From assembly GCA_976226885.1 (NCBI GenBank), contig OZ320313.1, positions 121,334,001 to 121,398,000 on the forward strand: a stretch of DNA of 64,000 bases. The letters are read 5' to 3'. Position 1 is the stretch's first letter. Each line of letters opens with the position of its first letter. Position numbers and translations under genes: made by a program. Source of the stretch: Iphione sp. A-MEVVRFRX5 (Eukaryota). Of this stretch, positions 8,342-32,691 are shown piece after piece. The notes beneath the pieces are model-generated. The model searched no databases. It saw nothing but the letters and a program-made list of their open reading frames with translations, and had not been told where the DNA came from.

Positions 8342-8521
8342 CTATTGAGCAAGTCTGTCGACTCCTCCTTCTCTTCGCCCGCTCCGGATGAGTTCACCCG
8401 ACGAGCCACCGAGTGTCGACCGGGCATCGGAGACGGAGACGATCCCCCGCCGGAACGGTCGCGCCGGCGGGTCGACAGACGCGACATGAACGACGAGTTG
8501 TGCTTGAACTTCTCTCGCTCA
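8342..8521 (-). CDS. KCNQ: KCNQ helix A-B linker exon
   Basis: ctctcgttgcag|T GAG...AAT AG|gtgggg; 180 bp, phase 2-2 matching exon 7; EREKFKHNSSFMSRLSTRRRDRSGGGSSPSPMPGRHSVARRVNSSGAGEEKEESTDLLN; the FKHNSSF..RL.T.RR segment resembles the linker I recall from insect KCNQ; GC-rich coding-like composition. Confidence 0.8.
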
Positions 8522-20428: not shown

Positions 20429-21755
20429 AATAGATAGATAGATACCTTTATTTCATATTCTCATGTTTACAACTGAGATGTTCCAGTGAAAGTGAAACAG
20501 CAGACGAATAACTGTACATATAACACAACACACAAACAAGCGATTGGGTAGGACAGGATTTGATTCTTTCAGTGAGTCTTGGATAGATAGTTTTTAATGG
20601 GCTGGGTCTGTTTGCTCAATTGTAGTGGTCCCGGCAATTCGTTCCATTTACTTAGACCTTGATACCAAAAGCTTCTCATGTAACTGCCTGCATTAGATTT
20701 GCTCATCAGTAGAACAGCCCCTGTACATGATTTAGTGTGAATGCGCTGTTTTCAATTTACACAATTCCAAACATTTCATCATGTGAATCAGAAGGACTGT
20801 TTGCACCATGCCTTGATATGTTGGAGGTTCTCCAGGTGCAGTAACTGCTGTAACAACTTTGCTGGCCTGTCAGAACATTGAGAACCCAGCATGACTGTCG
20901 TTAACAGTCTGTTATACTCTATTTGAAGATCATCAAGGAACTTATTGCTCTTGTGCACTAGGAAGCATAAGCCATATTCAACCTCTGGAGCCAAATAGGC
21001 TGTGGCTCTCACTGAGAACTCGAGATTATCTGAGACCTTAGCCAGTGCAAGTGCACACTGCCTTGCTTTCCTCTTTATTACATTGGTCAGGGGTCTCCAG
21101 GTGAGCCCTTCATCAAGGTGATAGCCCAGCAGAACAGCCTCTCGAACCTTCTTAATCGGACTGCCACACAGGGTCAAGTTGAGGTCCAACACTTTTGACT
21201 TCCTAAAGGACATGTACATACATTTACTAGTGTTCAGGACAAGCCCATTTTCTGAGCACCAGGATGCTACATCCTTCAGGCTTCTTTGCATTTTGACCCT
21301 AGGTGCTACCAAGTTGGATGCCCAGCAGTATACCGTAATGGTGTCTGCATACATGATTAAATTAGCAATTACTAAAGACTTTGGTAGTGTCCTCATGATG
21401 ACTGTAAATAGCAGGAGCCCCATCAGTCTTCCCTGAGAGATCCCTTGATTTGCATCTAGAATTTGAGAGTTTTGTCTAGCATGGCAACTGCCACATGCCT
21501 ATATGCATTCAGAGCTTCATAGGCAACACTTACGATCGTAGCAATGGCAGTTTCGGTTCCTCGGCCCGCTTGGAGCCCATACTGTTGTGGGCACAACTTA
21601 CAAGAACTCTCCAGATAGGCTACAAAATAAGTGTGGACCACCTTTTCTACAGTTTTACCTATGTTGGATAAAACAGCAATGGAGCAGTAGTTCTCTACTG
21701 AGAGGAATGGCTATTTTTTGAGTAGCGGACTTACTCTTGCACACTTCCAAGACTG
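20429..21755 (-). mobile_element. 5'-truncated, decayed non-LTR retrotransposon (CR1/L2-group, Crack/Daphne-like)
   Basis: RT motifs WKCARVSPLLKK, QYGLQAGRGTETA, LIMYADT, WCSENGLVLNTSKC, with stops and frameshifts; 3' end has AATAAA followed by a (TATC)n tail at 20429-20445. Confidence 0.9.
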
Positions 21756-23589: not shown

Positions 23590-23774
23590 GATGACGGACT
23601 CCTGCAGGGTTTAGTGTGTGGCTTCCAGGTGGCCACCGAGAGCGAGTTCTCGTCTGCCGCGTAACACCGCCACAGACTCTGGATCAGCGTTGCCGCGGGC
23701 ACCCGCCGCCGAATGAGATGTTTTTGTCGCTGTTGCTGTTGCACCTTCAGGGCGAACCCTGAACCGAGTATACC
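23590..23774 (-). CDS. KCNQ: KCNQ exon 7 (S6 end and calmodulin-binding helix A)
   Basis: ttctcttag|GGT ATA...TCA TC|gtgagt; 185 bp; [61 protein letters not shown]. Confidence 0.96.
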
Positions 23775-24157: not shown

Positions 24158-24268
24158 AGCAGGAAGCGCGAAGAATGAGATTCCCAGGACGGCACAGAAG
24201 GCAGCGATGAGCTTTCCAGCCCATGTTATTGGTACCGTGTCACCATAACCCACTGTACATAAGGTTAT
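24158..24268 (-). CDS. KCNQ: KCNQ exon 6 (selectivity filter TVGYGD and S6)
   Basis: ttgttccag|ATA ACC...CCT GCT|gtacgt; 111 bp; [37 protein letters not shown]. Confidence 0.97.
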
Positions 24269-24582: not shown

Positions 24583-24711
24583 TACCCCCCACCACAGAGC
24601 ATCAGCGTAGGTACCGAATCTTTTTGGATTTTTCTCTTTCTCGGCGAGAAAAACCAAAAACGATGAGAATATAAGGCCTAAGAAACCGATGTACAATGTT
24701 GTGAACAGCTC
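24583..24711 (-). CDS. KCNQ: KCNQ exon 5 (S5, turret, pore helix start)
   Basis: tttattcag|GAG CTG...GGG GTA|gtaagt; 129 bp; [43 protein letters not shown]. Confidence 0.97.
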
Positions 24712-25858: not shown

Positions 25859-25960
25859 AGAGAGAAAAAGACAGACAGACAGACAGACATGACAGAGACA
25901 GGGAATTGGAGAGAGAGAGACTGACAGACAGCGAGAGGCAGAGACCCACGGAGAGAGACA
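25859..25960. repeat. Compound (GACA)n/(GA)n microsatellite
   Basis: agacagacagacagacagac...gagagagaga. Confidence 0.85.
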
Positions 25961-26027
25961 ACGATTATCTGAGGGAGGGAGGGAGCTACGCAACGAACCA
26001 GTATGCCATATAGAGGGTTCTCCTTAC

Positions 26028-26203
26028 CTGTCGGTGCGCCCAAACAACGGAGCCGAGCAGTTTCCATGATCCTCCCCGCCGATCAACGCGAACCATACGC
26101 AAGATTTGGAAGAAGCGGAGACCCCGCAGCGCTGAAGTGGCAAACACCTGCCCGCTGCTCCCCAGGCAGAGTATAACAATACTAGCAGAGATGACGACGA
26201 TAT
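26028..26203 (-). CDS. KCNQ: KCNQ exon 4 (S3, S4 voltage sensor, S4-S5 linker)
   Basis: ttttgcag|AT ATC...CGA CAG|gtaagg; 176 bp; [59 protein letters not shown]. Confidence 0.97.
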
Positions 26204-26220
26204 CTGCAAAAAGCAGCCCA

Positions 26221-26260
26221 GGGGAGGGAGGGAGGGAGGGAGGGAGGGAGGAAAGGAAGA
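26221..26260. repeat. (GGGA)n repeat forming an extended pyrimidine tract upstream of the KCNQ exon 4 acceptor
   Basis: ggggagggagggagggagggagggagggag on + strand, which is (TCCC)n in the pre-mRNA. Confidence 0.9.
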
Positions 26261-28404
26261 GTGAGAAAGGAGGGGCAGGGGGGAAACAAGGAGGAGAAGG
26301 GTGTTGGGAGTGGCAACGAGGACGAGAAGGGAATATATGTTAGTTTGCAGTACAATCGGTGTTAAACCTTTGGGGTCGTACAGGTAGACCGATACATGGC
26401 AGCGACAAATGTTACAAACGGGAAGCTCCATACGTCGAATAAGTCAATAAAGTTATTCATAGAAGATCGTGTACGCTGAATAAATTTGTATTTGAATTGG
26501 TAAGAATTACATGCGTCCAATTCTCGCGAAATGCGTTACAGTTAGAGTCTTTATGAATTGAAATCTGTAAATTGCAAATGGAGCGACTGTTGTCAGCATC
26601 TTTTTATGACTAAATTACATATCAAAATCAGCAGACACTGCGGGGCAATACAACATTCCCTTTATGAAGCATGTGTACCAGTATATACGATGTTTTAGAC
26701 ATCACCGTAAAATTTTCCTGTACTTTTGGCAATGCCGATAAGTCACTCTCAAAGCGTACCTGTAATATTTGCCCCTTCCCTTTTTCAAGTCTACAGTTTA
26801 AAGGTAAAGGATTACGAATTCCATTTTCCTGCATTTTATAACCACACATATATAAAAGGAACTCATTCTGGGCATCGTTTGACCAACCTGGTGCGCAGCA
26901 AAGCGACAAACAGAAATCGTTTACTTGAAGTGTGGTGTGTGGAATAACCACAGAATATAATGATTATATTGGCATGATATGTTTTTCCACTAAACATTTT
27001 ATACAAATTGAAAGGACATTGCAAATACAGTGAACAAGTAATGAAAAAAATAGATATTTCGCGACATGTATTTACATGTATTTTAAATCTGAAATAATTG
27101 TTCAGTATTTCACAATAACAATGGACGATCATAAAGTTAAAGGTTGCAAAATATCTCACAAAATCTCATTAAAAAATCTTTAACAAAGTATCAAAACAAT
27201 AATTCTCAGATTCCATTGAAAAAAGGTTCATTTATTGCCTTCTTGATAATTATGTCAACTCAACGAAAGTCAAACGTTAAATAGCTCATGCTGCACTGGT
27301 TTAAAGCAACAACATTCAAAAGTGAAGAAGAATAAAATATTGCAGCTGTGATAAACGTGAACTGGTGGTTTGCAGTGCTCTGGCGAATGGTTTCTTGTGT
27401 TGGTAAGTAACGCATTGTGTGCATACAGTGAAGGTGCAAGATGGTCGATTGATATGTCTCAAAGTAGACTCTAGCTCAATCGGCAAAATTTTATTTTACT
27501 GGGGACAAAAACCACCCAATCAGCTGCAGCCAGGTACGTCAGTTGAATATTGTGATTATGCAGTTCCAACTCAACTTTCTATAAGTTGACCTGCTGGGCC
27601 ACAAACCCTCGAATTGCTCTAGCCCATACAACCTTTTATCAAACCATAACACCTATTTGGATTTTTAAACAAAATTATTTCCAGAGTCAAATCATTACAG
27701 TTGATACCAAAAAGCTGATCCATACCCAACAGAAATGACCAAAGGGTTCATGATATAACATTCCAAACGATTATCTTTTACACGCCCTATGCACAGTGCT
27801 AGCATCATTGAAAGTAGTTTACCCAGGGCCTTATTGTCGGCATTGGAATGTTATTTTTCATTTCCTTAAGACGAAGATAAATTATGCAAATGGCCTCCCA
27901 CCTCTGTATGTACGTCTTAAACCTAATAATTGTCATTACTTTGGGAAGTATTCCGCCATACGTATTTCATCTGTTTGTGCATAGATGGCAGCCATGGTGC
28001 GCCCCTAGCAAGGAGAGAAATTACAACGAGTTTGACCACGAACTCAAAAGTGACAGCACCGTACACATATTAAAAAAAACAATGTGCAGTTGACGAATAA
28101 TTGTCACTCTGGAAGTACACCTGTTATCATGAAGGTGTTCTTGCCCTCTCATTTAATATATGCATCCAGCACCCGCGGCACCAAGAAGAAGGCCCTGAAA
28201 ACGGTGCGCTTTTGCTACGTAATGATTGTCGATTTGTTACATAGAAATGTTGGATTACTACCAGATTGCTTCTGATGTAACTACTAGGCTTGGTTACACC
28301 CAGATGACGTCAGGAGTACTGCTGTTGAACTAGTGGTGCCAGACGAGTACGACGACAGGCCGACAGTATAGTGGGGGGTGGTGGGTAGGTGGGGGGCCAC
28401 GTAC

Positions 28405-28531
28405 CTACAACACATAGTGGCTTTCGAGCAAATCGGAACCGTCCGGCCATATCTTGATACCTAAAGCGGCAGCCAGCTGACCACAGCCTCATTACATACT
28501 CTACGGCAAACCACATAACCATAATAATCTC
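28405..28531 (-). CDS. KCNQ: KCNQ exon 3b (S2 and S2-S3 linker), second copy of duplicated exon
   Basis: ctatttcag|GAG...GTA G|gtacgt; 127 bp; EIIMVMWFAVEYVMRLWSAGCRFRYQDMAGRFRFARKPLCVV; CTAAC branch-point consensus about 24 nt upstream. Confidence 0.93.
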
Positions 28532-28968
28532 CTGAAATAGAGCAGGCAGAGCCGTTAGCGCTGTCGAGTGCTGAAGGTTTTTTTTCTATGTAATTTCTTG
28601 CTGGCCCACTGCACACACACAGTGGAACGAGGAGGAAGAGGAGGTGGTGGCGGTGGTGCGGTGACTCATTTTGCGCTATGGTGGAAAGGGGTGAGGCGCA
28701 TTGGGGAGCTTGGTGGTGGCTGTCAGTAGTTCCAGTAGCAGCTGTTTCCACACGAGAGCTGCCTTAAGATGTGTCGACAGCTTCTTTACCCTTGTGTAAT
28801 GTAAAAAAAGCAGGGCATATTCCTCTCTCCTCCTTTCGGCAGACCTGCGCACAGCAGACGGCTGCAGACATCCAACACCTGTTCTACCTGCACTGCACCA
28901 CACCTGAAAGGCCAAGTGAGGGGGATTTCTAGAGGATGAGTACAACGCAAAACACGTATAATACCTAC

Positions 28969-29095
28969 CTACAATACACAAAGGCCGCTTAATAAATTGC
29001 AACCGTCCCGAGAGTTCCTGGTAGCGGGATCGACAGCCGGCCGACCACACTCTCAGCAAAAATTCGGTCATAAACCAAACAACCATGATCAGTTC
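28969..29095 (-). CDS. KCNQ: KCNQ exon 3a (S2 and S2-S3 linker), first copy of duplicated exon
   Basis: tttcag|GAA...GTA G|gtaggt; 127 bp; ELIMVVWFMTEFLLRVWSAGCRSRYQELSGRLQFIKRPLCIV; contains KCNQ RVWSAGC motif. Confidence 0.93.
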
Positions 29096-31252
29096 CTGAA
29101 ACAACGAGACGAGGGAACAGTTGGAAGGCAGTATATCAGTAGGTAGCTACCCCTACAGACTAATGGGAGATGGAGGAGGAGGAGGAGAAGACTGGGAGGG
29201 CGGCAGTCATTTGTGTGACGACCCTATACGACACTCGCTAAGTACTGGAAATCCTACCAAATAATACACGTTTGTGCGGCATACCGAATGAAGGTGACTG
29301 GTGTAATGCGGGTATGACATTTATACATGAAGACGTAAACATGGATCCATCCTGAAGTGCTACGTAATAAACTACTCCTGGTTGATTTGTTCTTGACACA
29401 AACGCACACATTAGGGTTTTATACCGTTCAAACTAGCTAAACTTAATTTTAACATTGAAGTATTATTTTAACATTAAAGTTTGTTCCCACTTATTGCTAG
29501 CTCATATAGGGTATAGAAGATTAAGAATCTTAGATGGAAATGGAATATACTGTGTATACGCATCTATCGGGTCAATAGCAAGGCTCTACCGTGAAGACAG
29601 GATATATACTAGATATTACACCACAGAGCCAGTCATGTGCACACACTGTATGCAGCTACATACACTGCAAAACATATTCATATCAGATTTCAGAATTTTG
29701 CAGTAGCAGTATCTGTTAGATTGTCTCTCAGTCCATAAGTCAAAATATATGCATAGAATTATTTCCACTTTGTCTTGTGTCTATTAACAGCCATCTGCAA
29801 GAAAATAACATTAATCTTTGGTTAAGTGAAATACACCATTCATATGCAATTTTCAATATCAATTCTGTTTCAATGGTATTCATAACATGCACAAATATTT
29901 TGCTTTCAGTTTCATTACAAAGGCTTTATAAAAATGACTTTAAAAAAAATCAGTATGTTGAAATGTATCCAATGTGCGTTTTAAAAAGAAAAAAGACACA
30001 ACATATACATTGTCAGATTTCTAAACATCATATATTAAGCATGCAGTGCACAGTTACAATTACGTGTGTAAACAAAGAGGACGCGAATTATGGACTGATG
30101 GAAACTAGAGAATATACTCAGCTCAAACTAAAGAAACTATTTAGCTAAAATTTACAAAATGATATGTACATGTATATTAATTGTGTTCCGGTAATGGTCA
30201 TTGTATTCGTTGCACTTTGTAAACATAGGGTTGGATAGCTATGGATGATTCATCGATTACACTAACATGTTTCTGTGATATTTGAACTTCTTTATCGACC
30301 GATTATTGTGTGTGTAAAGCCGGGTGTGACAGAAAGGAGGCGCATGAAAGTGCATGAGCCATCTTATGAGACTAGAACATTAATATCAATAATCCTAAAA
30401 TACTGTGCAATAAATGAGAGGCTTACTCACCAAATGATACAACACATTACTGGACACTTCTTCAAGTTGTGGAACAGTAGAAAATATACTTAAAAGCAGA
30501 CACAGGAAGACCATCAGGAATCTGGAATAGTATAGGGCCAAGATAACTCATCAGGACAAGTACCCACAAGGTCAAAGACTAAAGACCAATTGACTAGTCC
30601 CAGTCAGAAGGTATGCTTTATGACAGGTAACGCGGGTTAGCTCAGAGCTTTGCTGACATCTTTCCAGACCACCGTACATCAACTTAATTTGTCTGAGAAC
30701 CAGTGATGTGCTACATCCTGAATGGGACCATGTCTAGAGTGGCAGGCATTGAACGATCTCATCATCTCTCCCACCAGCCAATCGCATCCTCCTCGGAAAT
30801 TGGTAGCATTTATATACACATACAATATATAGATATATGTATATATATGCATATACCTAGTGCCTGCTCACTAATTGAAAAATAACCATACTTCTAACAT
30901 TTTTCGATTTGCTACCTTAAATTGTCAAGATTACACTATAAATGGCTTTTCCCTGTATGTCCTTCTTCCAAGATATACAAGTGGCGCAAGATGATATATC
31001 GGGAGCTCTAGTGGTCTTGTGGTGATAGCTCTCCCGAAAAAATTGAATCAATATGTGATTTGGATCCATTTTTATAAAGACATTTTGCCAAATGCACCCT
31101 GGTCTGAGGTCACGAGAAGCATTGTCGATTGGCTGGGGACGGTGGTTGATGACATGTTGAAGAGACGAACGGCCCTAGCCAACACAAGGGGTGAACAGTC
31201 GGCTCATCGATGGCACAGCCAAGCCAGTAGAGGCGGAAGCTTCGACACTCAC

Positions 31253-31343
31253 CATGTAATACAGCACCTTGCCAGTAACATCCTCAAAAATGGGGATGGT
31301 GGAAAACACACTCAATACTAAACAGAGAAAGACCATCATAAAT
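31253..31343 (-). CDS. KCNQ: KCNQ potassium channel exon (S1 and S1-S2 loop; equivalent to vertebrate KCNQ exon 2)
   Basis: tttccag|A TTT ATG...TAC ATG|gtgagt; 91 bp; encodes FMMVFLCLVLSVFSTIPIFEDVTGKVLYYM, matching the KCNQ S1 motif (CLxLSVFSTI); same length as vertebrate KCNQ exon 2. Confidence 0.95.
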
Positions 31344-32691
31344 CTGGAAATAGATAATAATACCACACACTAAATGAAGATTGGGTTGCCATGGTAATGT
31401 ACTTATCGGTGGCCAACGATCTTACTCAACATTATATGTAAATGTGATAACTGCACACCACTTTGTTCTGCTTTGTGTCTATTTGAAGCTTAAGTAACGT
31501 TCATGATGGCCGTATGGGCTTTGACAAAATGGTACTCTTACGTTAAAAAAGTAATCTTTGTCAATTTTAAAATGATCTCCATGGGGTATAATAAAATGGT
31601 CATATGGTTAGAACTGAGTTTAGTCAATACGACACAACTCACAAATGGTTTGAGAGTACATATCAGTTCATCGATTATCGATTCAATACGTATACAAAAT
31701 GGCATGCTTGCATACAAACACCGAACGGTTATTGTCTCATTCATCCACATAGTTTTACCGTATAGTAAAGATGGTTTTATAAGGCTTTAATATGTATTTT
31801 ACGTTGCTCTCCTGTGTTGTCAGTGCCAGAGCAAAATACCTATGTCTCCTTGCAAAAATAGACTTTAAGTATCATTCTTGCCAGCAAACATAGCTATTTT
31901 ATTCTAACCTTCTTCGGTTTGAAGGAGAGTGGATAGATATCCCCTGCTGGAAATGTTGCAATATTCTTGAATTGTAAAAACGATCAAGAAAAGTCCCCTT
32001 CACACCTGCTGTACATCGCAAAAACTGTATGAATTTACATTGGTAAATATTGCGAAGCATATTACTCCCAAACAGCGAGAGAGGACTCATCTAATTAAAA
32101 GGACATTACATTTTCCGAAGGATTTATACCATTTACAGCCTGAACAGATACATTTCCGACCAAACCATGCCTTTCGACTATTCTTTAGATGATTTCTCAC
32201 TGCCTAATGATTCGCGGTCTTCAATGCATAGTTACAGGTAGCTCAGAGCATTGTTGTTGTATTCGTATACTGCCTCCAGACTTGATGAGTATAGGAAAAC
32301 TAAAAACCTACTCACGTTACCCGGGGAGAATGAAGGTACTTACCTGCAACAGAAAAGAAAATGACACTGTAATCCTGCACTTTGGAATTAGCATGGGGTA
32401 TTTTCAGCAATAAGAAATGACCAGGGATGTATTCAGCCAAAGTTGAAAAAAATGAAAACAAAAATTAAAGAGATGTTACAATAGAAATCTGAGATTGAGT
32501 ATATAAAGAATGCTTGCATTTTCAAACATCACCAGAGACAGGTGGACGAAGGTAAATGCCGCAAGTGTGCATCTGCAGAGTATAGCTATCACAGAAGTAT
32601 AAGCAAGCCTGACAGACCAAACAAATCTTGCATAGTCCAACTGGCTGCACAGGTATCATAGCAAAACACTGGTTTGTCCCAACCATAAGTA

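What the first reader, a model, noticed from the sequence alone, without database searches (positions are those of the whole stretch)
28405..29095. Tandem-duplicated, apparently mutually exclusive KCNQ exon pair giving two versions of S2 and the S2-S3 linker
Seen in sequence: two 127-bp exons 437 bp apart, both with canonical splice sites and no stops, 24/42 aa identical, with mostly conservative changes and diverged synonymous sites. Including both shifts the frame to a TAG inside 3b, and skipping both also frameshifts (phase 0 to phase 1), so exactly one must be used. Established: the KCNQ S2-S3 loop contacts PIP2 and calmodulin, and S2 carries voltage-sensor countercharges. Inference: the gene encodes two voltage-sensor variants (SRYQELSGRLQFIKRP versus FRYQDMAGRFRFARKP) differing in basic-residue pattern, a splice switch that could tune PIP2/CaM sensitivity and gating. 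I do not recall mutually exclusive splicing at this exon in vertebrate or fly KCNQs, but I cannot search the literature.
Basis: partly seen in the sequence, partly recalled or inferred. Interest (0 to 1): 0.88.

Follow-up and report, generated by a model that had tools for sequence, protein, structure and literature searches.

The report
Alternative voltage-sensor exons in worm KCNQ
An annelid worm's KCNQ (Kv7) potassium-channel gene has two adjacent pairs of duplicated exons of which only one per pair can be used, so one gene can encode up to four voltage-sensor versions; the pairs are old and under selection, but no RNA data could be obtained.

Summary
On the minus strand, exon 3a (29095-28969) and exon 3b (28531-28405) are each 127 bp with AG/GT splice sites. 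They lie 437 bp apart and are 24/42 aa identical. Using both or neither shifts the frame into stop codons.

The same 2a-2b-3a-3b-4 layout, with identical exon lengths and splice sites, occurs in Capitella, Paralvinella and a close relative. The 3a-3b pair also occurs in two further annelid contigs. Two leech paralogues, Lamellibrachia and the brachiopod Lingula have single copies.

Each copy is closer to its counterpart in other species than to its neighbour, and AU tests reject lineage-specific duplication. dN/dS against the close relative is 0.03-0.13 for all four exons, while the introns cannot be aligned. Pseudo-exon, poison-exon, artefact and separate-paralogue readings are therefore very unlikely.

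Fixed a/b differences fall on the equivalents of human KCNQ1 S182 (the calmodulin contact; Phe in 3b) and R192 (Gln in 3a).

No RNA run was listed and no 3b-containing spliced product was found, so actual use, exclusivity and any gating effect remain inferred. This is a new, lineage-specific case of a known mechanism.

The parts
31253..31343 (-). Exon 2a, 91 bp: rest of S1, the S1-S2 loop and the start of S2 (equivalent to human KCNQ1 130-159). This is the derived 'TIPIFE' type.
   Evidence: Acceptor ttccag and donor gtgagt. Orthologues of exactly 91 bp in L004, Paralvinella and Capitella. dN/dS 0.13 against L004.
30431..30521 (-). Exon 2b, 91 bp, the alternative copy of exon 2. It is the ancestral-looking type, closest to the single exon of leeches and other phyla.
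   Evidence: Acceptor ttccag and donor gtgagt. 18/30 aa identical to 2a. Orthologues found. dN/dS 0.09.
28969..29095 (-). Exon 3a, 127 bp: S2 from the first countercharge Glu, the S2-S3 linker and the start of S3 (equivalent to KCNQ1 160-201). Ser at the 182 position, Gln at the 192 position.
   Evidence: Orthologues in six annelid genomes. dN/dS 0.028.
28405..28531 (-). Exon 3b, 127 bp, the alternative copy of exon 3. Phe at the 182 position, Arg at the 192 position.
   Evidence: Orthologues in six annelid genomes. dN/dS 0.053.
26028..26203 (-). Constitutive exon 4, 176 bp: S3 and S4. It completes the split Asp codon left open by either exon 3 copy.
   Evidence: Matches Pfam Ion_trans positions 74-122.
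24583..24711 (-). Constitutive exon 5, 129 bp: S4-S5 linker and S5. Single copy.
   Evidence: tblastn with Capitella KCNQ, 93% identity. Boundaries read.
24158..24268 (-). Constitutive exon 6, 111 bp: pore helix, TVGYGD selectivity filter and the start of S6. Single copy.
   Evidence: 97% identity. Pfam Ion_trans_2, E = 1.4e-10. Boundaries read.
23590..23774 (-). Constitutive exon 7, 185 bp: end of S6 and proximal C-terminal helix A. Single copy in this window.
8386..8521 (-). Start of the next coding exon (the 'KFKHNSSFMSRLSTRR' region) after an intron of about 15 kb. Its 3' end was not determined.
31833..31897 (-). 65-nt non-coding block about 490 nt upstream of exon 2a. It is the only intronic stretch conserved with the close relative (89% identity). 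Its function is unknown and it may not belong to the splice switch.
   Evidence: Absent from the more distant annelid loci. No Rfam match. No consistent pairing partner.

Best explanation
The window holds the 5' two-thirds of the core of a KCNQ2-subfamily (Kv7) potassium-channel gene of an annelid, on the minus strand. Two neighbouring exons of the voltage-sensor domain were each tandemly duplicated in an annelid ancestor, giving the order 2a-2b-3a-3b.

The exon lengths, 91 and 127 nt, are not multiples of three. Any mRNA with none or both exons of a pair therefore runs into premature stops and would be degraded or give a truncated protein. Productive mRNAs carry exactly one exon 2 and one exon 3, which allows up to four voltage-sensor versions.

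The exon 3 choice swaps S2 and the S2-S3 linker. 3a keeps the universal Ser at the calmodulin-contact position (KCNQ1 S182) but has Gln where other KCNQs have a basic residue (R192). 3b keeps the basic residue in most species but has Phe at the calmodulin-contact position. The exon 2 choice swaps the outer S1 and the S1-S2 loop.

Shown here: the anatomy, the frame logic, the age of the pairs, and purifying selection on all four exons. Inferred: that both copies are spliced in vivo, that the choice is regulated by cell type, probably by trans-acting factors since no conserved RNA pairing elements were found, and that the isoforms differ in calmodulin/PIP2 coupling and gating.
For: Anatomy and frame logic.

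The same five-exon layout, with exact 91/91/127/127 lengths and AG/GT sites, occurs in Paralvinella, Capitella and the close relative L004. The 3a/3b pair also occurs in L005 and L008.

Orthology of the copies: a-a identity between species is 30-39/42 and b-b is 26-37/42, against 24-28/42 for a-b. Six columns are fixed differences across six genomes.

Phylogeny: all six 3b exons form one clade. AU tests reject a window-lineage-specific duplication (p = 0.0013) and a Capitella-specific one (p = 0.0165).

Selection: dN/dS is 0.13, 0.09, 0.028 and 0.053 for 2a, 2b, 3a and 3b, with dS up to about 1.2 and introns about 50% identical, which is random.

Gene identity: the exons match Capitella KCNQ at 85-97% identity, human KCNQ1-5 structures and Pfam Ion_trans and Ion_trans_2.

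Residue mapping: exon 3 equals KCNQ1 160-201. S182 contacts calmodulin Y100, and S182K shifts V1/2 by about +20 mV (PMC7732179). R192 is a predicted PIP2 contact of the S2-S3 linker (PMC13627702).

Outgroups: every other KCNQ sampled has Ser at 182 and, with one exception, a basic residue at 192.
Against: There is no transcript evidence. No RNA run was listed for this stretch.

Every annotated or transcript-derived annelid protein found uses a 3a-type exon: Capitella, two Helobdella genes, Hirudo and Lamellibrachia. No protein with 3b spliced to exon 4 was found. A degenerate junction scan of metagenome contigs was also empty.

3b is seen only in genomic DNA and in one evidently mis-predicted Paralvinella model that strings 2a, 2b and 3b together.

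Three annelid lineages, the two leech genes and Lamellibrachia, do without the second copies.

In human KCNQ1 the R192Q change had little effect (PMC13627702), so the Gln in 3a may matter less than its position suggests.

No conserved regulatory element that could enforce the choice was detected.
Confidence: 0.78

Rival explanations
1. The pairs are used in a coupled or otherwise restricted way, for example only 2b+3a and 2a+3b, or one copy tied to an alternative promoter. The gene would then make two isoforms rather than four freely combined ones.
For: Both leech paralogues kept exactly the ancestral-looking pair 2b+3a and lost 2a and 3b together. S1 and S2 pack against each other in the voltage sensor (established knowledge). 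Exon 1 lies outside the window, so alternative first exons cannot be excluded.
Against: Lamellibrachia keeps a 2a-type exon together with a 3a-type exon (Ser at position 23, Gln at 33). This shows 2a works with 3a. The two duplications are separate tandem events, in the order 2a-2b-3a-3b rather than 2-3-2-3.
Confidence: 0.12
2. The second copy of each pair acts mainly as a poison exon. Its inclusion together with the first copy creates a premature stop and lowers channel expression, rather than encoding an alternative protein segment.
For: Double inclusion does give premature stops. No 3b-containing protein product is on record.
Against: A poison exon is constrained at the RNA level, not the protein level. 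Here synonymous sites are saturated (dS about 1.2) while amino acids are kept (dN/dS 0.03-0.13). The reading frame, exact length and channel-typical residues (both S2 Glu countercharges, the WSAGCR motif, Pro before S3) are preserved in six genomes over a deep divergence.
Confidence: 0.05
3. One copy of each pair is a decaying pseudo-exon that is never spliced.
For: Annotated annelid proteins use only 3a-type exons. Some lineages lost the second copies.
Against: Strong purifying selection acts on all four exons. All have intact frames and consensus splice sites in every genome that has them. Type-specific residues are conserved across species.
Confidence: 0.03
4. The duplication is an assembly artefact or belongs to a separate paralogous gene.
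For: None found.
Against: The copies are only 57-60% identical at the protein level and differ at most synonymous sites. The arrangement recurs in independent assemblies of five other annelids. Exons 4-7 are single copy and colinear.
Confidence: 0.01

Closest known systems
Mutually exclusive voltage-sensor exons of other voltage-gated channels: vertebrate Nav exon 5N/5A (domain I S3-S4), CaV1.2 exons 21/22 (IIIS2) and 31/32 (IVS3), and the alternative exons of insect para (from established knowledge; CaV1.2 exon 8/8a is cited in PMC4165533)
   Same: Tandemly duplicated exons of equal length and phase that replace one transmembrane segment or linker of a voltage sensor. One is used per transcript and tunes gating.
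   Different: A different channel family (KCNQ/Kv7) and a different site (S1 to the S2-S3 linker). There are two adjacent clusters. It is restricted to part of the annelids. Its use has not been seen in RNA.
Other alternative exon pairs within invertebrate KCNQ genes, seen here in annotated isoforms: helix B in moths (Cydia) and the S6-helix A exon in the brachiopod Lingula
   Same: The same gene subfamily and the same principle, with homologous equal-length segments swapped between isoforms. These also affect calmodulin-binding parts of the channel.
   Different: Those pairs lie in the cytoplasmic C-terminus, not in the voltage sensor. The window has only one copy of those exons, and moths and Lingula have only one exon 2 and one exon 3.
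Vertebrate KCNQ2-5 paralogues and the two leech KCNQ2-subfamily genes
   Same: Diversification of the same channel core, including S2-S3 linker residues that set PIP2 and calmodulin behaviour. Most invertebrates have one gene per KCNQ subfamily (bioRxiv 10.1101/2025.09.21.677649).
   Different: There the diversity comes from whole-gene duplication. Here it comes from exon duplication inside a single gene. The leeches, which lack the exon pairs, have two genes instead.

Membership tests
KCNQ/Kv7 channel, KCNQ2 subfamily | Six-TM voltage-gated K+ channel core with a TxGYGD filter and an Arg-rich S4 | tested here: met
   Exons 4-7 encode S3-S6, including the '[13 protein letters not shown]' S4 motif and TVGYGD. 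They are 85-97% identical to Capitella KCNQ and match Pfam Ion_trans and Ion_trans_2.
KCNQ/Kv7 channel, KCNQ2 subfamily | Closest solved relatives are KCNQ channels, and the S2-S3 linker has the subfamily motif (CRSRYQ rather than the CRSKY of KCNQ1) | tested here: met
   All 26 PDB hits for either exon 3 copy are KCNQ1-5. 3a has CRSRYQ and 3b has CRFRYQ, whereas KCNQ1-type sequences have CRSKY.
KCNQ/Kv7 channel, KCNQ2 subfamily | C-terminal KCNQ_channel domain (PF03520: helices A-D, calmodulin binding, tetramerisation) | tested here: inconclusive
   Only helix A (exon 7) and the following exon lie in the window. Orthologues carry PF03520. The rest of the gene lies beyond the window.
Mutually exclusive exon cluster | Adjacent exons in one gene, on the same strand, homologous in sequence | tested here: met
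   The order is 2a-2b-3a-3b, with 18/30 and 24/42 aa identical.
Mutually exclusive exon cluster | Equal length and equal splice phase, with canonical splice sites on every copy | tested here: met
   Lengths are 91/91 and 127/127 nt, with AG/GT sites throughout, in the window and in five other genomes.
Mutually exclusive exon cluster | Inclusion of both or neither is incompatible with a productive mRNA | tested here: met
   All 12 non-canonical combinations hit stops or shift the frame.
Mutually exclusive exon cluster | Transcripts contain exactly one copy, and each copy is used in some transcripts | not testable with these tools
   No RNA run was listed. No spliced 3b product is in the protein collections. 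The junction scan was empty. Use of 2b+3a is seen in Capitella, Helobdella and Hirudo products, and of a 2a-type exon in a Lamellibrachia model.
Mutually exclusive exon cluster | A known enforcing mechanism other than frame/NMD: steric hindrance, U2/U12 incompatibility, or competing RNA pairing | tested here: not met
   Introns between copies are 127-4037 nt, which is too long for steric hindrance. All donors are U2-type. No conserved docking or selector elements were found. This feature is not required for membership.

The most novel reading that the evidence does not exclude
Part of the annelids evolved a 2 x 2 combinatorial voltage-sensor cassette in their single KCNQ2-type gene. Its exon 3 switch exchanges the calmodulin-contact Ser (KCNQ1 S182) for Phe in one isoform, while the other isoform lacks the linker's basic residue (R192). 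This would be a natural, cell-specifically deployed switch between calmodulin-coupled and PIP2-coupled gating modes. It would do by splicing what vertebrates and leeches do by gene duplication.
Probability: 0.4. Interest if true: 0.65.

Novelty: new member of a known kind. Interest (0 to 1): 0.55.

Why it matters
KCNQ/Kv7 channels set neuronal and muscle excitability. How calmodulin and PIP2 act on the voltage sensor through the S2-S3 linker is an active structural question.

Here evolution has kept two versions of exactly that linker, and two of the S1-S2 loop, in one gene across the deep split between Capitella and Paralvinella. The versions differ at only a handful of fixed positions, and these include the mapped calmodulin contact. 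That gives a ready-made, naturally validated pair of constructs for testing voltage-sensor-to-pore coupling.

It is also a clean example of exon duplication and gene duplication serving as interchangeable routes to channel diversity. Lineages with the exon pairs have one gene, and leeches without them have two.

It does not reveal a new mechanism of splicing or gating.

Tried and rejected
- RNA evidence: the look-up of sequencing runs listed no run for 25900-31500, so read laying could not be used.
- Spliced 3b or 2a products: a search with the Paralvinella model over its S1-S4 part and with a 3b exon alone found only genomic read-through ORFs. Every 3b hit is followed by Gly from the GT donor, not by the Asp of exon 4.
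- Junction scan: a degenerate 3b-to-exon-4 junction pattern found nothing in metagenome contigs.
- Competing RNA structures: duplex scans of the conserved upstream block against the pre-mRNA gave different best partners in the window and in L004. No intronic 12-mers were shared beyond chance inside the clusters.
- Rfam: only a sub-threshold mir-297-like hit in an AT/TG-rich stretch, read as chance.
- Rbfox-type UGCAUG: 11 sites in 23.2 kb around the alternative exons of six genomes, against my rough uniform-composition expectation of about 6. Several sit in or just after the 3a-3b region, but there is no positional conservation and none near exon 3 in the window. This is a weak lead only.
- Exon 1: not found in the window.
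- Species identity: could not be determined for the window, L004, L005 or L008.
- Literature: no report of alternative S1-S3 exons in any KCNQ.
- Moth KCNQ isoforms: checked for an exon 3 pair; they differ elsewhere.

Full report
**1. What is in the sequence**

The gene runs on the minus strand. Reading the reverse complement gives exon 3a at 29095-28969 and exon 3b at 28531-28405.
- Each is 127 bp. Each is preceded by a pyrimidine tract ending in tttcag, and followed by gtaggt (3a) or gtacgt (3b).
- A 437-bp intron separates them.
- The two 42-codon reading frames are 24/42 identical.
- At the DNA level similarity is confined to the exons and their splice sites.
- tblastn of one copy against the other gives E about 2e-17.

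Translating all combinations with the downstream S3-S4 exon (26203-26028) shows two things. 3a+3b runs into a TAG inside 3b. Skipping both shifts the frame of exon 4.

**2.

Scanning the minus-strand frames upstream and reading the DNA shows that the preceding exon is also doubled.
- 2a lies at 31343-31253 and 2b at 30521-30431.
- Both are 91 bp with ccag acceptors and gtgagt donors, and they are 18/30 aa identical.
- This exon encodes most of S1, the S1-S2 loop and the first residues of S2.
- 91 is also not a multiple of three. Of the 16 combinations of exon 2 and exon 3 usage, only the four with one of each stay open.

Downstream exons for S4-S5/S5, the pore, S6-helix A and the next C-terminal exon are single copy and colinear with Capitella KCNQ at 85-97% identity. 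Pfam places them in order along Ion_trans and Ion_trans_2. Exon 1 is not in the window.

**3. Which gene and which organism**

A profile of the two exon 3 peptides, searched against 1.8 billion representative proteins, returned only KCNQ-like sequences.
- The named nearest relatives are annelid: Helobdella, Capitella, Hirudo, Paralvinella and Lamellibrachia.
- Earlier notes of this scan also call this genome annelid-like. I did not determine the species.
- The S2-S3 motif is CRSRYQ-like, as in the KCNQ2 subfamily, not the CRSKY of KCNQ1.
- A recent survey states that most invertebrates have one gene per KCNQ subfamily (bioRxiv 10.1101/2025.09.21.677649).

**4. Conservation in other genomes**

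I fetched the genomic loci of relatives and located every copy by tblastn, then read the splice sites.

| Locus | Organism or source | Exon 2 and exon 3 copies found |
|---|---|---|
| L001 | Paralvinella palmiformis | 2a-2b-3a-3b-4, exact 91/91/127/127 lengths, AG/GT at every boundary |
| L002 | Capitella teleta | same full layout |
| L004 | Logan contig from a close relative | same layout for 2a-2b-3a-3b; the contig ends before exon 4 |
| L005 | shorter contig, unnamed species | 3a-3b pair (only that part is covered) |
| L008 | shorter contig, unnamed species | 3a-3b pair (only that part is covered) |
| L003, L009 | two Helobdella paralogues | single 2b-type plus single 3a-type exon |
| L006 | Lamellibrachia | single 2a-type plus single 3a-type exon |
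| L007 | Lingula (brachiopod) | one exon of each |

The single-copy results held when all variants were used as queries at E < 0.05.

**5. Age of the duplication**

- Between species, a-a identity is 30-39/42 and b-b is 26-37/42. Any a-b pair is 24-28/42.
- For exon 2 the figures are 20-27 and 22-29 against 11-19 of 30.
- In maximum-likelihood trees the a/b labels need only one change. This holds in 96% of bootstrap trees, although branch support is a modest 82/50 because there are only 42 columns.
- All six 3b exons form one clade.
- AU tests reject a duplication specific to the window lineage (p = 0.0013) or to Capitella (p = 0.0165).

Both pairs therefore predate the split of Capitella, Paralvinella and the window's lineage. 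They were lost in leeches and, in part, in Lamellibrachia. Whether they predate all annelids is open. Lingula's single copies are consistent with an origin inside annelids but do not establish it.

**6. Selection**

Against the close relative L004, dN/dS values are as follows.

| Exon | dN | dS | dN/dS |
|---|---|---|---|
| 2a | 0.043 | 0.32 | 0.13 |
| 2b | 0.015 | 0.16 | 0.09 |
| 3a | 0.032 | 1.13 | 0.028 |
| 3b | 0.063 | 1.19 | 0.053 |

- The introns between the exons are about 50% identical in alignable columns, which is random.
- blastn finds only the four exons plus one 65-nt block.
- Saturated synonymous sites with preserved amino acids mean protein-level constraint on all four exons.

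This removes the pseudo-exon reading. It also argues against a pure poison-exon role, which would constrain the RNA rather than the codons.

**7. What differs between the versions**

Both exon 3 copies align without gaps to residues 160-201 of full-length human KCNQ1 chains. Both keep the two S2 Glu countercharges (positions 1 and 11), the Arg after them, the WSAGCR motif and the Pro before S3.

Six columns are fixed differences in all six genomes.

| Column | KCNQ1 residue | 3a | 3b |
|---|---|---|---|
| 12 | 171 | Phe | Tyr |
| 16 | 175 | Ile/Val | Leu |
| 23 | 182 | Ser | Phe |
| 27 | 186 | Glu/Gln/Arg | Asp/Ser |
| 33 | 192 | Gln | Arg/Lys/His/Cys |
| 35 | 194 | Ile/Met | Ala |

- In every other KCNQ sampled, from either subfamily, position 182 is Ser. 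Position 192 is Arg or Lys, except for one Asn. Each copy therefore carries one derived change.
- In KCNQ1, S182 contacts calmodulin Y100. S182K shifts V1/2 by about +20 mV and slows activation by altering sensor-pore coupling. The neighbouring R181 acts through PIP2 (PMC7732179).
- R192 and R195 are computed PIP2 contacts of the linker, but R192Q had little effect in KCNQ1 (PMC13627702).

The best-grounded functional guess is that 3b changes the calmodulin-sensor contact. 3a may slightly lower the linker's positive charge. This is inference, since nothing was measured.

Exon 2 differs mainly in the S1-S2 loop: 'TIPIFE' in 2a against a 'TV.Q(Y/L)E' form in 2b that resembles other phyla. By these comparisons 2b and 3a are the ancestral-looking versions.

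**8. How exclusivity is likely enforced**

- All sites are U2-type GT-AG.
- The introns between copies are 127-4037 nt, which is too long for steric hindrance.
- No conserved docking or selector sequences were detectable between the window and its close relative.
- The one mechanism actually shown is the reading frame: wrong combinations carry premature stops. The choice itself would then be set by trans-acting regulators.
- UGCAUG motifs are about twice as frequent as my rough uniform-composition expectation around the alternative exons, but they are not positionally conserved. This is only a lead.

**9. What is missing**

- No RNA run was listed for this stretch.
- All annotated or transcript-derived annelid proteins use 3a-type exons, with 2b in Capitella, Helobdella and Hirudo, and a 2a-type exon in Lamellibrachia.
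- 3b was seen only in genomic ORFs and in one mis-predicted Paralvinella model that concatenates 2a, 2b and 3b.
- The junction scan was empty.

Use of 3b, strict exclusivity, tissue patterns and any coupling between the two choices are therefore untested. Lamellibrachia's 2a-type plus 3a-type gene argues against obligatory 2a-3b coupling. The leeches' joint loss of 2a and 3b is compatible with some coupling.

**10. Comparison with what is known, and novelty**

- Mutually exclusive exons that swap parts of voltage sensors are well known in Nav and CaV channels and in insect para (established knowledge).
- Annotated isoforms seen here show other alternative exon pairs in invertebrate KCNQ C-termini: helix B in moths and the S6-helix A exon in Lingula.
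- I found no report of alternative S1-S3 exons in any KCNQ. Absence from this open-access library is not proof.
- The same genome has other candidate exon pairs according to earlier notes of this scan, which I did not check.

I classify this as a new member of a known kind. It is a lineage-specific, double mutually exclusive exon system at a new and functionally interesting site of a well-studied channel. It is well supported by comparative genomics and still awaits RNA and electrophysiology.

Noticed in passing
window 31833-31897 (minus strand), matching L004 3002-3066: A 65-nt non-coding block about 490 nt upstream of exon 2a is 89% identical between the window and its close relative, although the surrounding intron cannot be aligned. 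A 27-nt core is identical and contains an AG|GT juxtaposition. There are stops in all frames, no Rfam match, no copy in the more distant annelids and no consistent pairing partner.
   Followed up: partly
window 20791-21498 (minus strand): A reverse-transcriptase fragment (Pfam RVT_1, E = 6e-10) sits inside the roughly 15-kb intron between the S6-helix A exon and the next coding exon. It is a retrotransposon remnant on the same strand as the gene.
   Followed up: partly
proteins P0231/P0255 versus P0232 (Cydia fagiglandana KCNQ isoforms): Annotated moth KCNQ isoforms differ by a homologous, equal-length swap of the helix B region of the C-terminus. This indicates a mutually exclusive exon pair at a different site of insect KCNQ.
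   Followed up: no
proteins P0020 versus P0153/P0154 (Lingula anatina KCNQ isoforms); locus L007: Lingula isoforms differ by a homologous swap of the segment after S6, including helix A with its IQ-like motif. This suggests another alternative exon pair in a brachiopod KCNQ. Lingula has single exons 2 and 3.
   Followed up: no
proteins P0001 and P0002: Two predicted KCNQ1-type proteins from other organisms contain the exon 3 segment twice. The two copies are identical in P0002 and identical up to the point where the first copy breaks off in P0001. This could be recent tandem exon duplication or a mis-assembly or mis-annotation.
   Followed up: no
loci L003 and L009 (Helobdella robusta): The leech has two KCNQ2-subfamily genes on different scaffolds, each with single 2b-type and 3a-type exons. 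Annelids with the exon pairs show one gene, a possible trade-off between gene and exon duplication.
   Followed up: partly
window 30801-30869 (minus strand): A weak mir-297-like Rfam hit (27 bits against a gathering score of 90, E = 0.11) lies in a TA/TG-rich low-complexity stretch of the 2a-2b intron. It is most likely chance.
   Followed up: no
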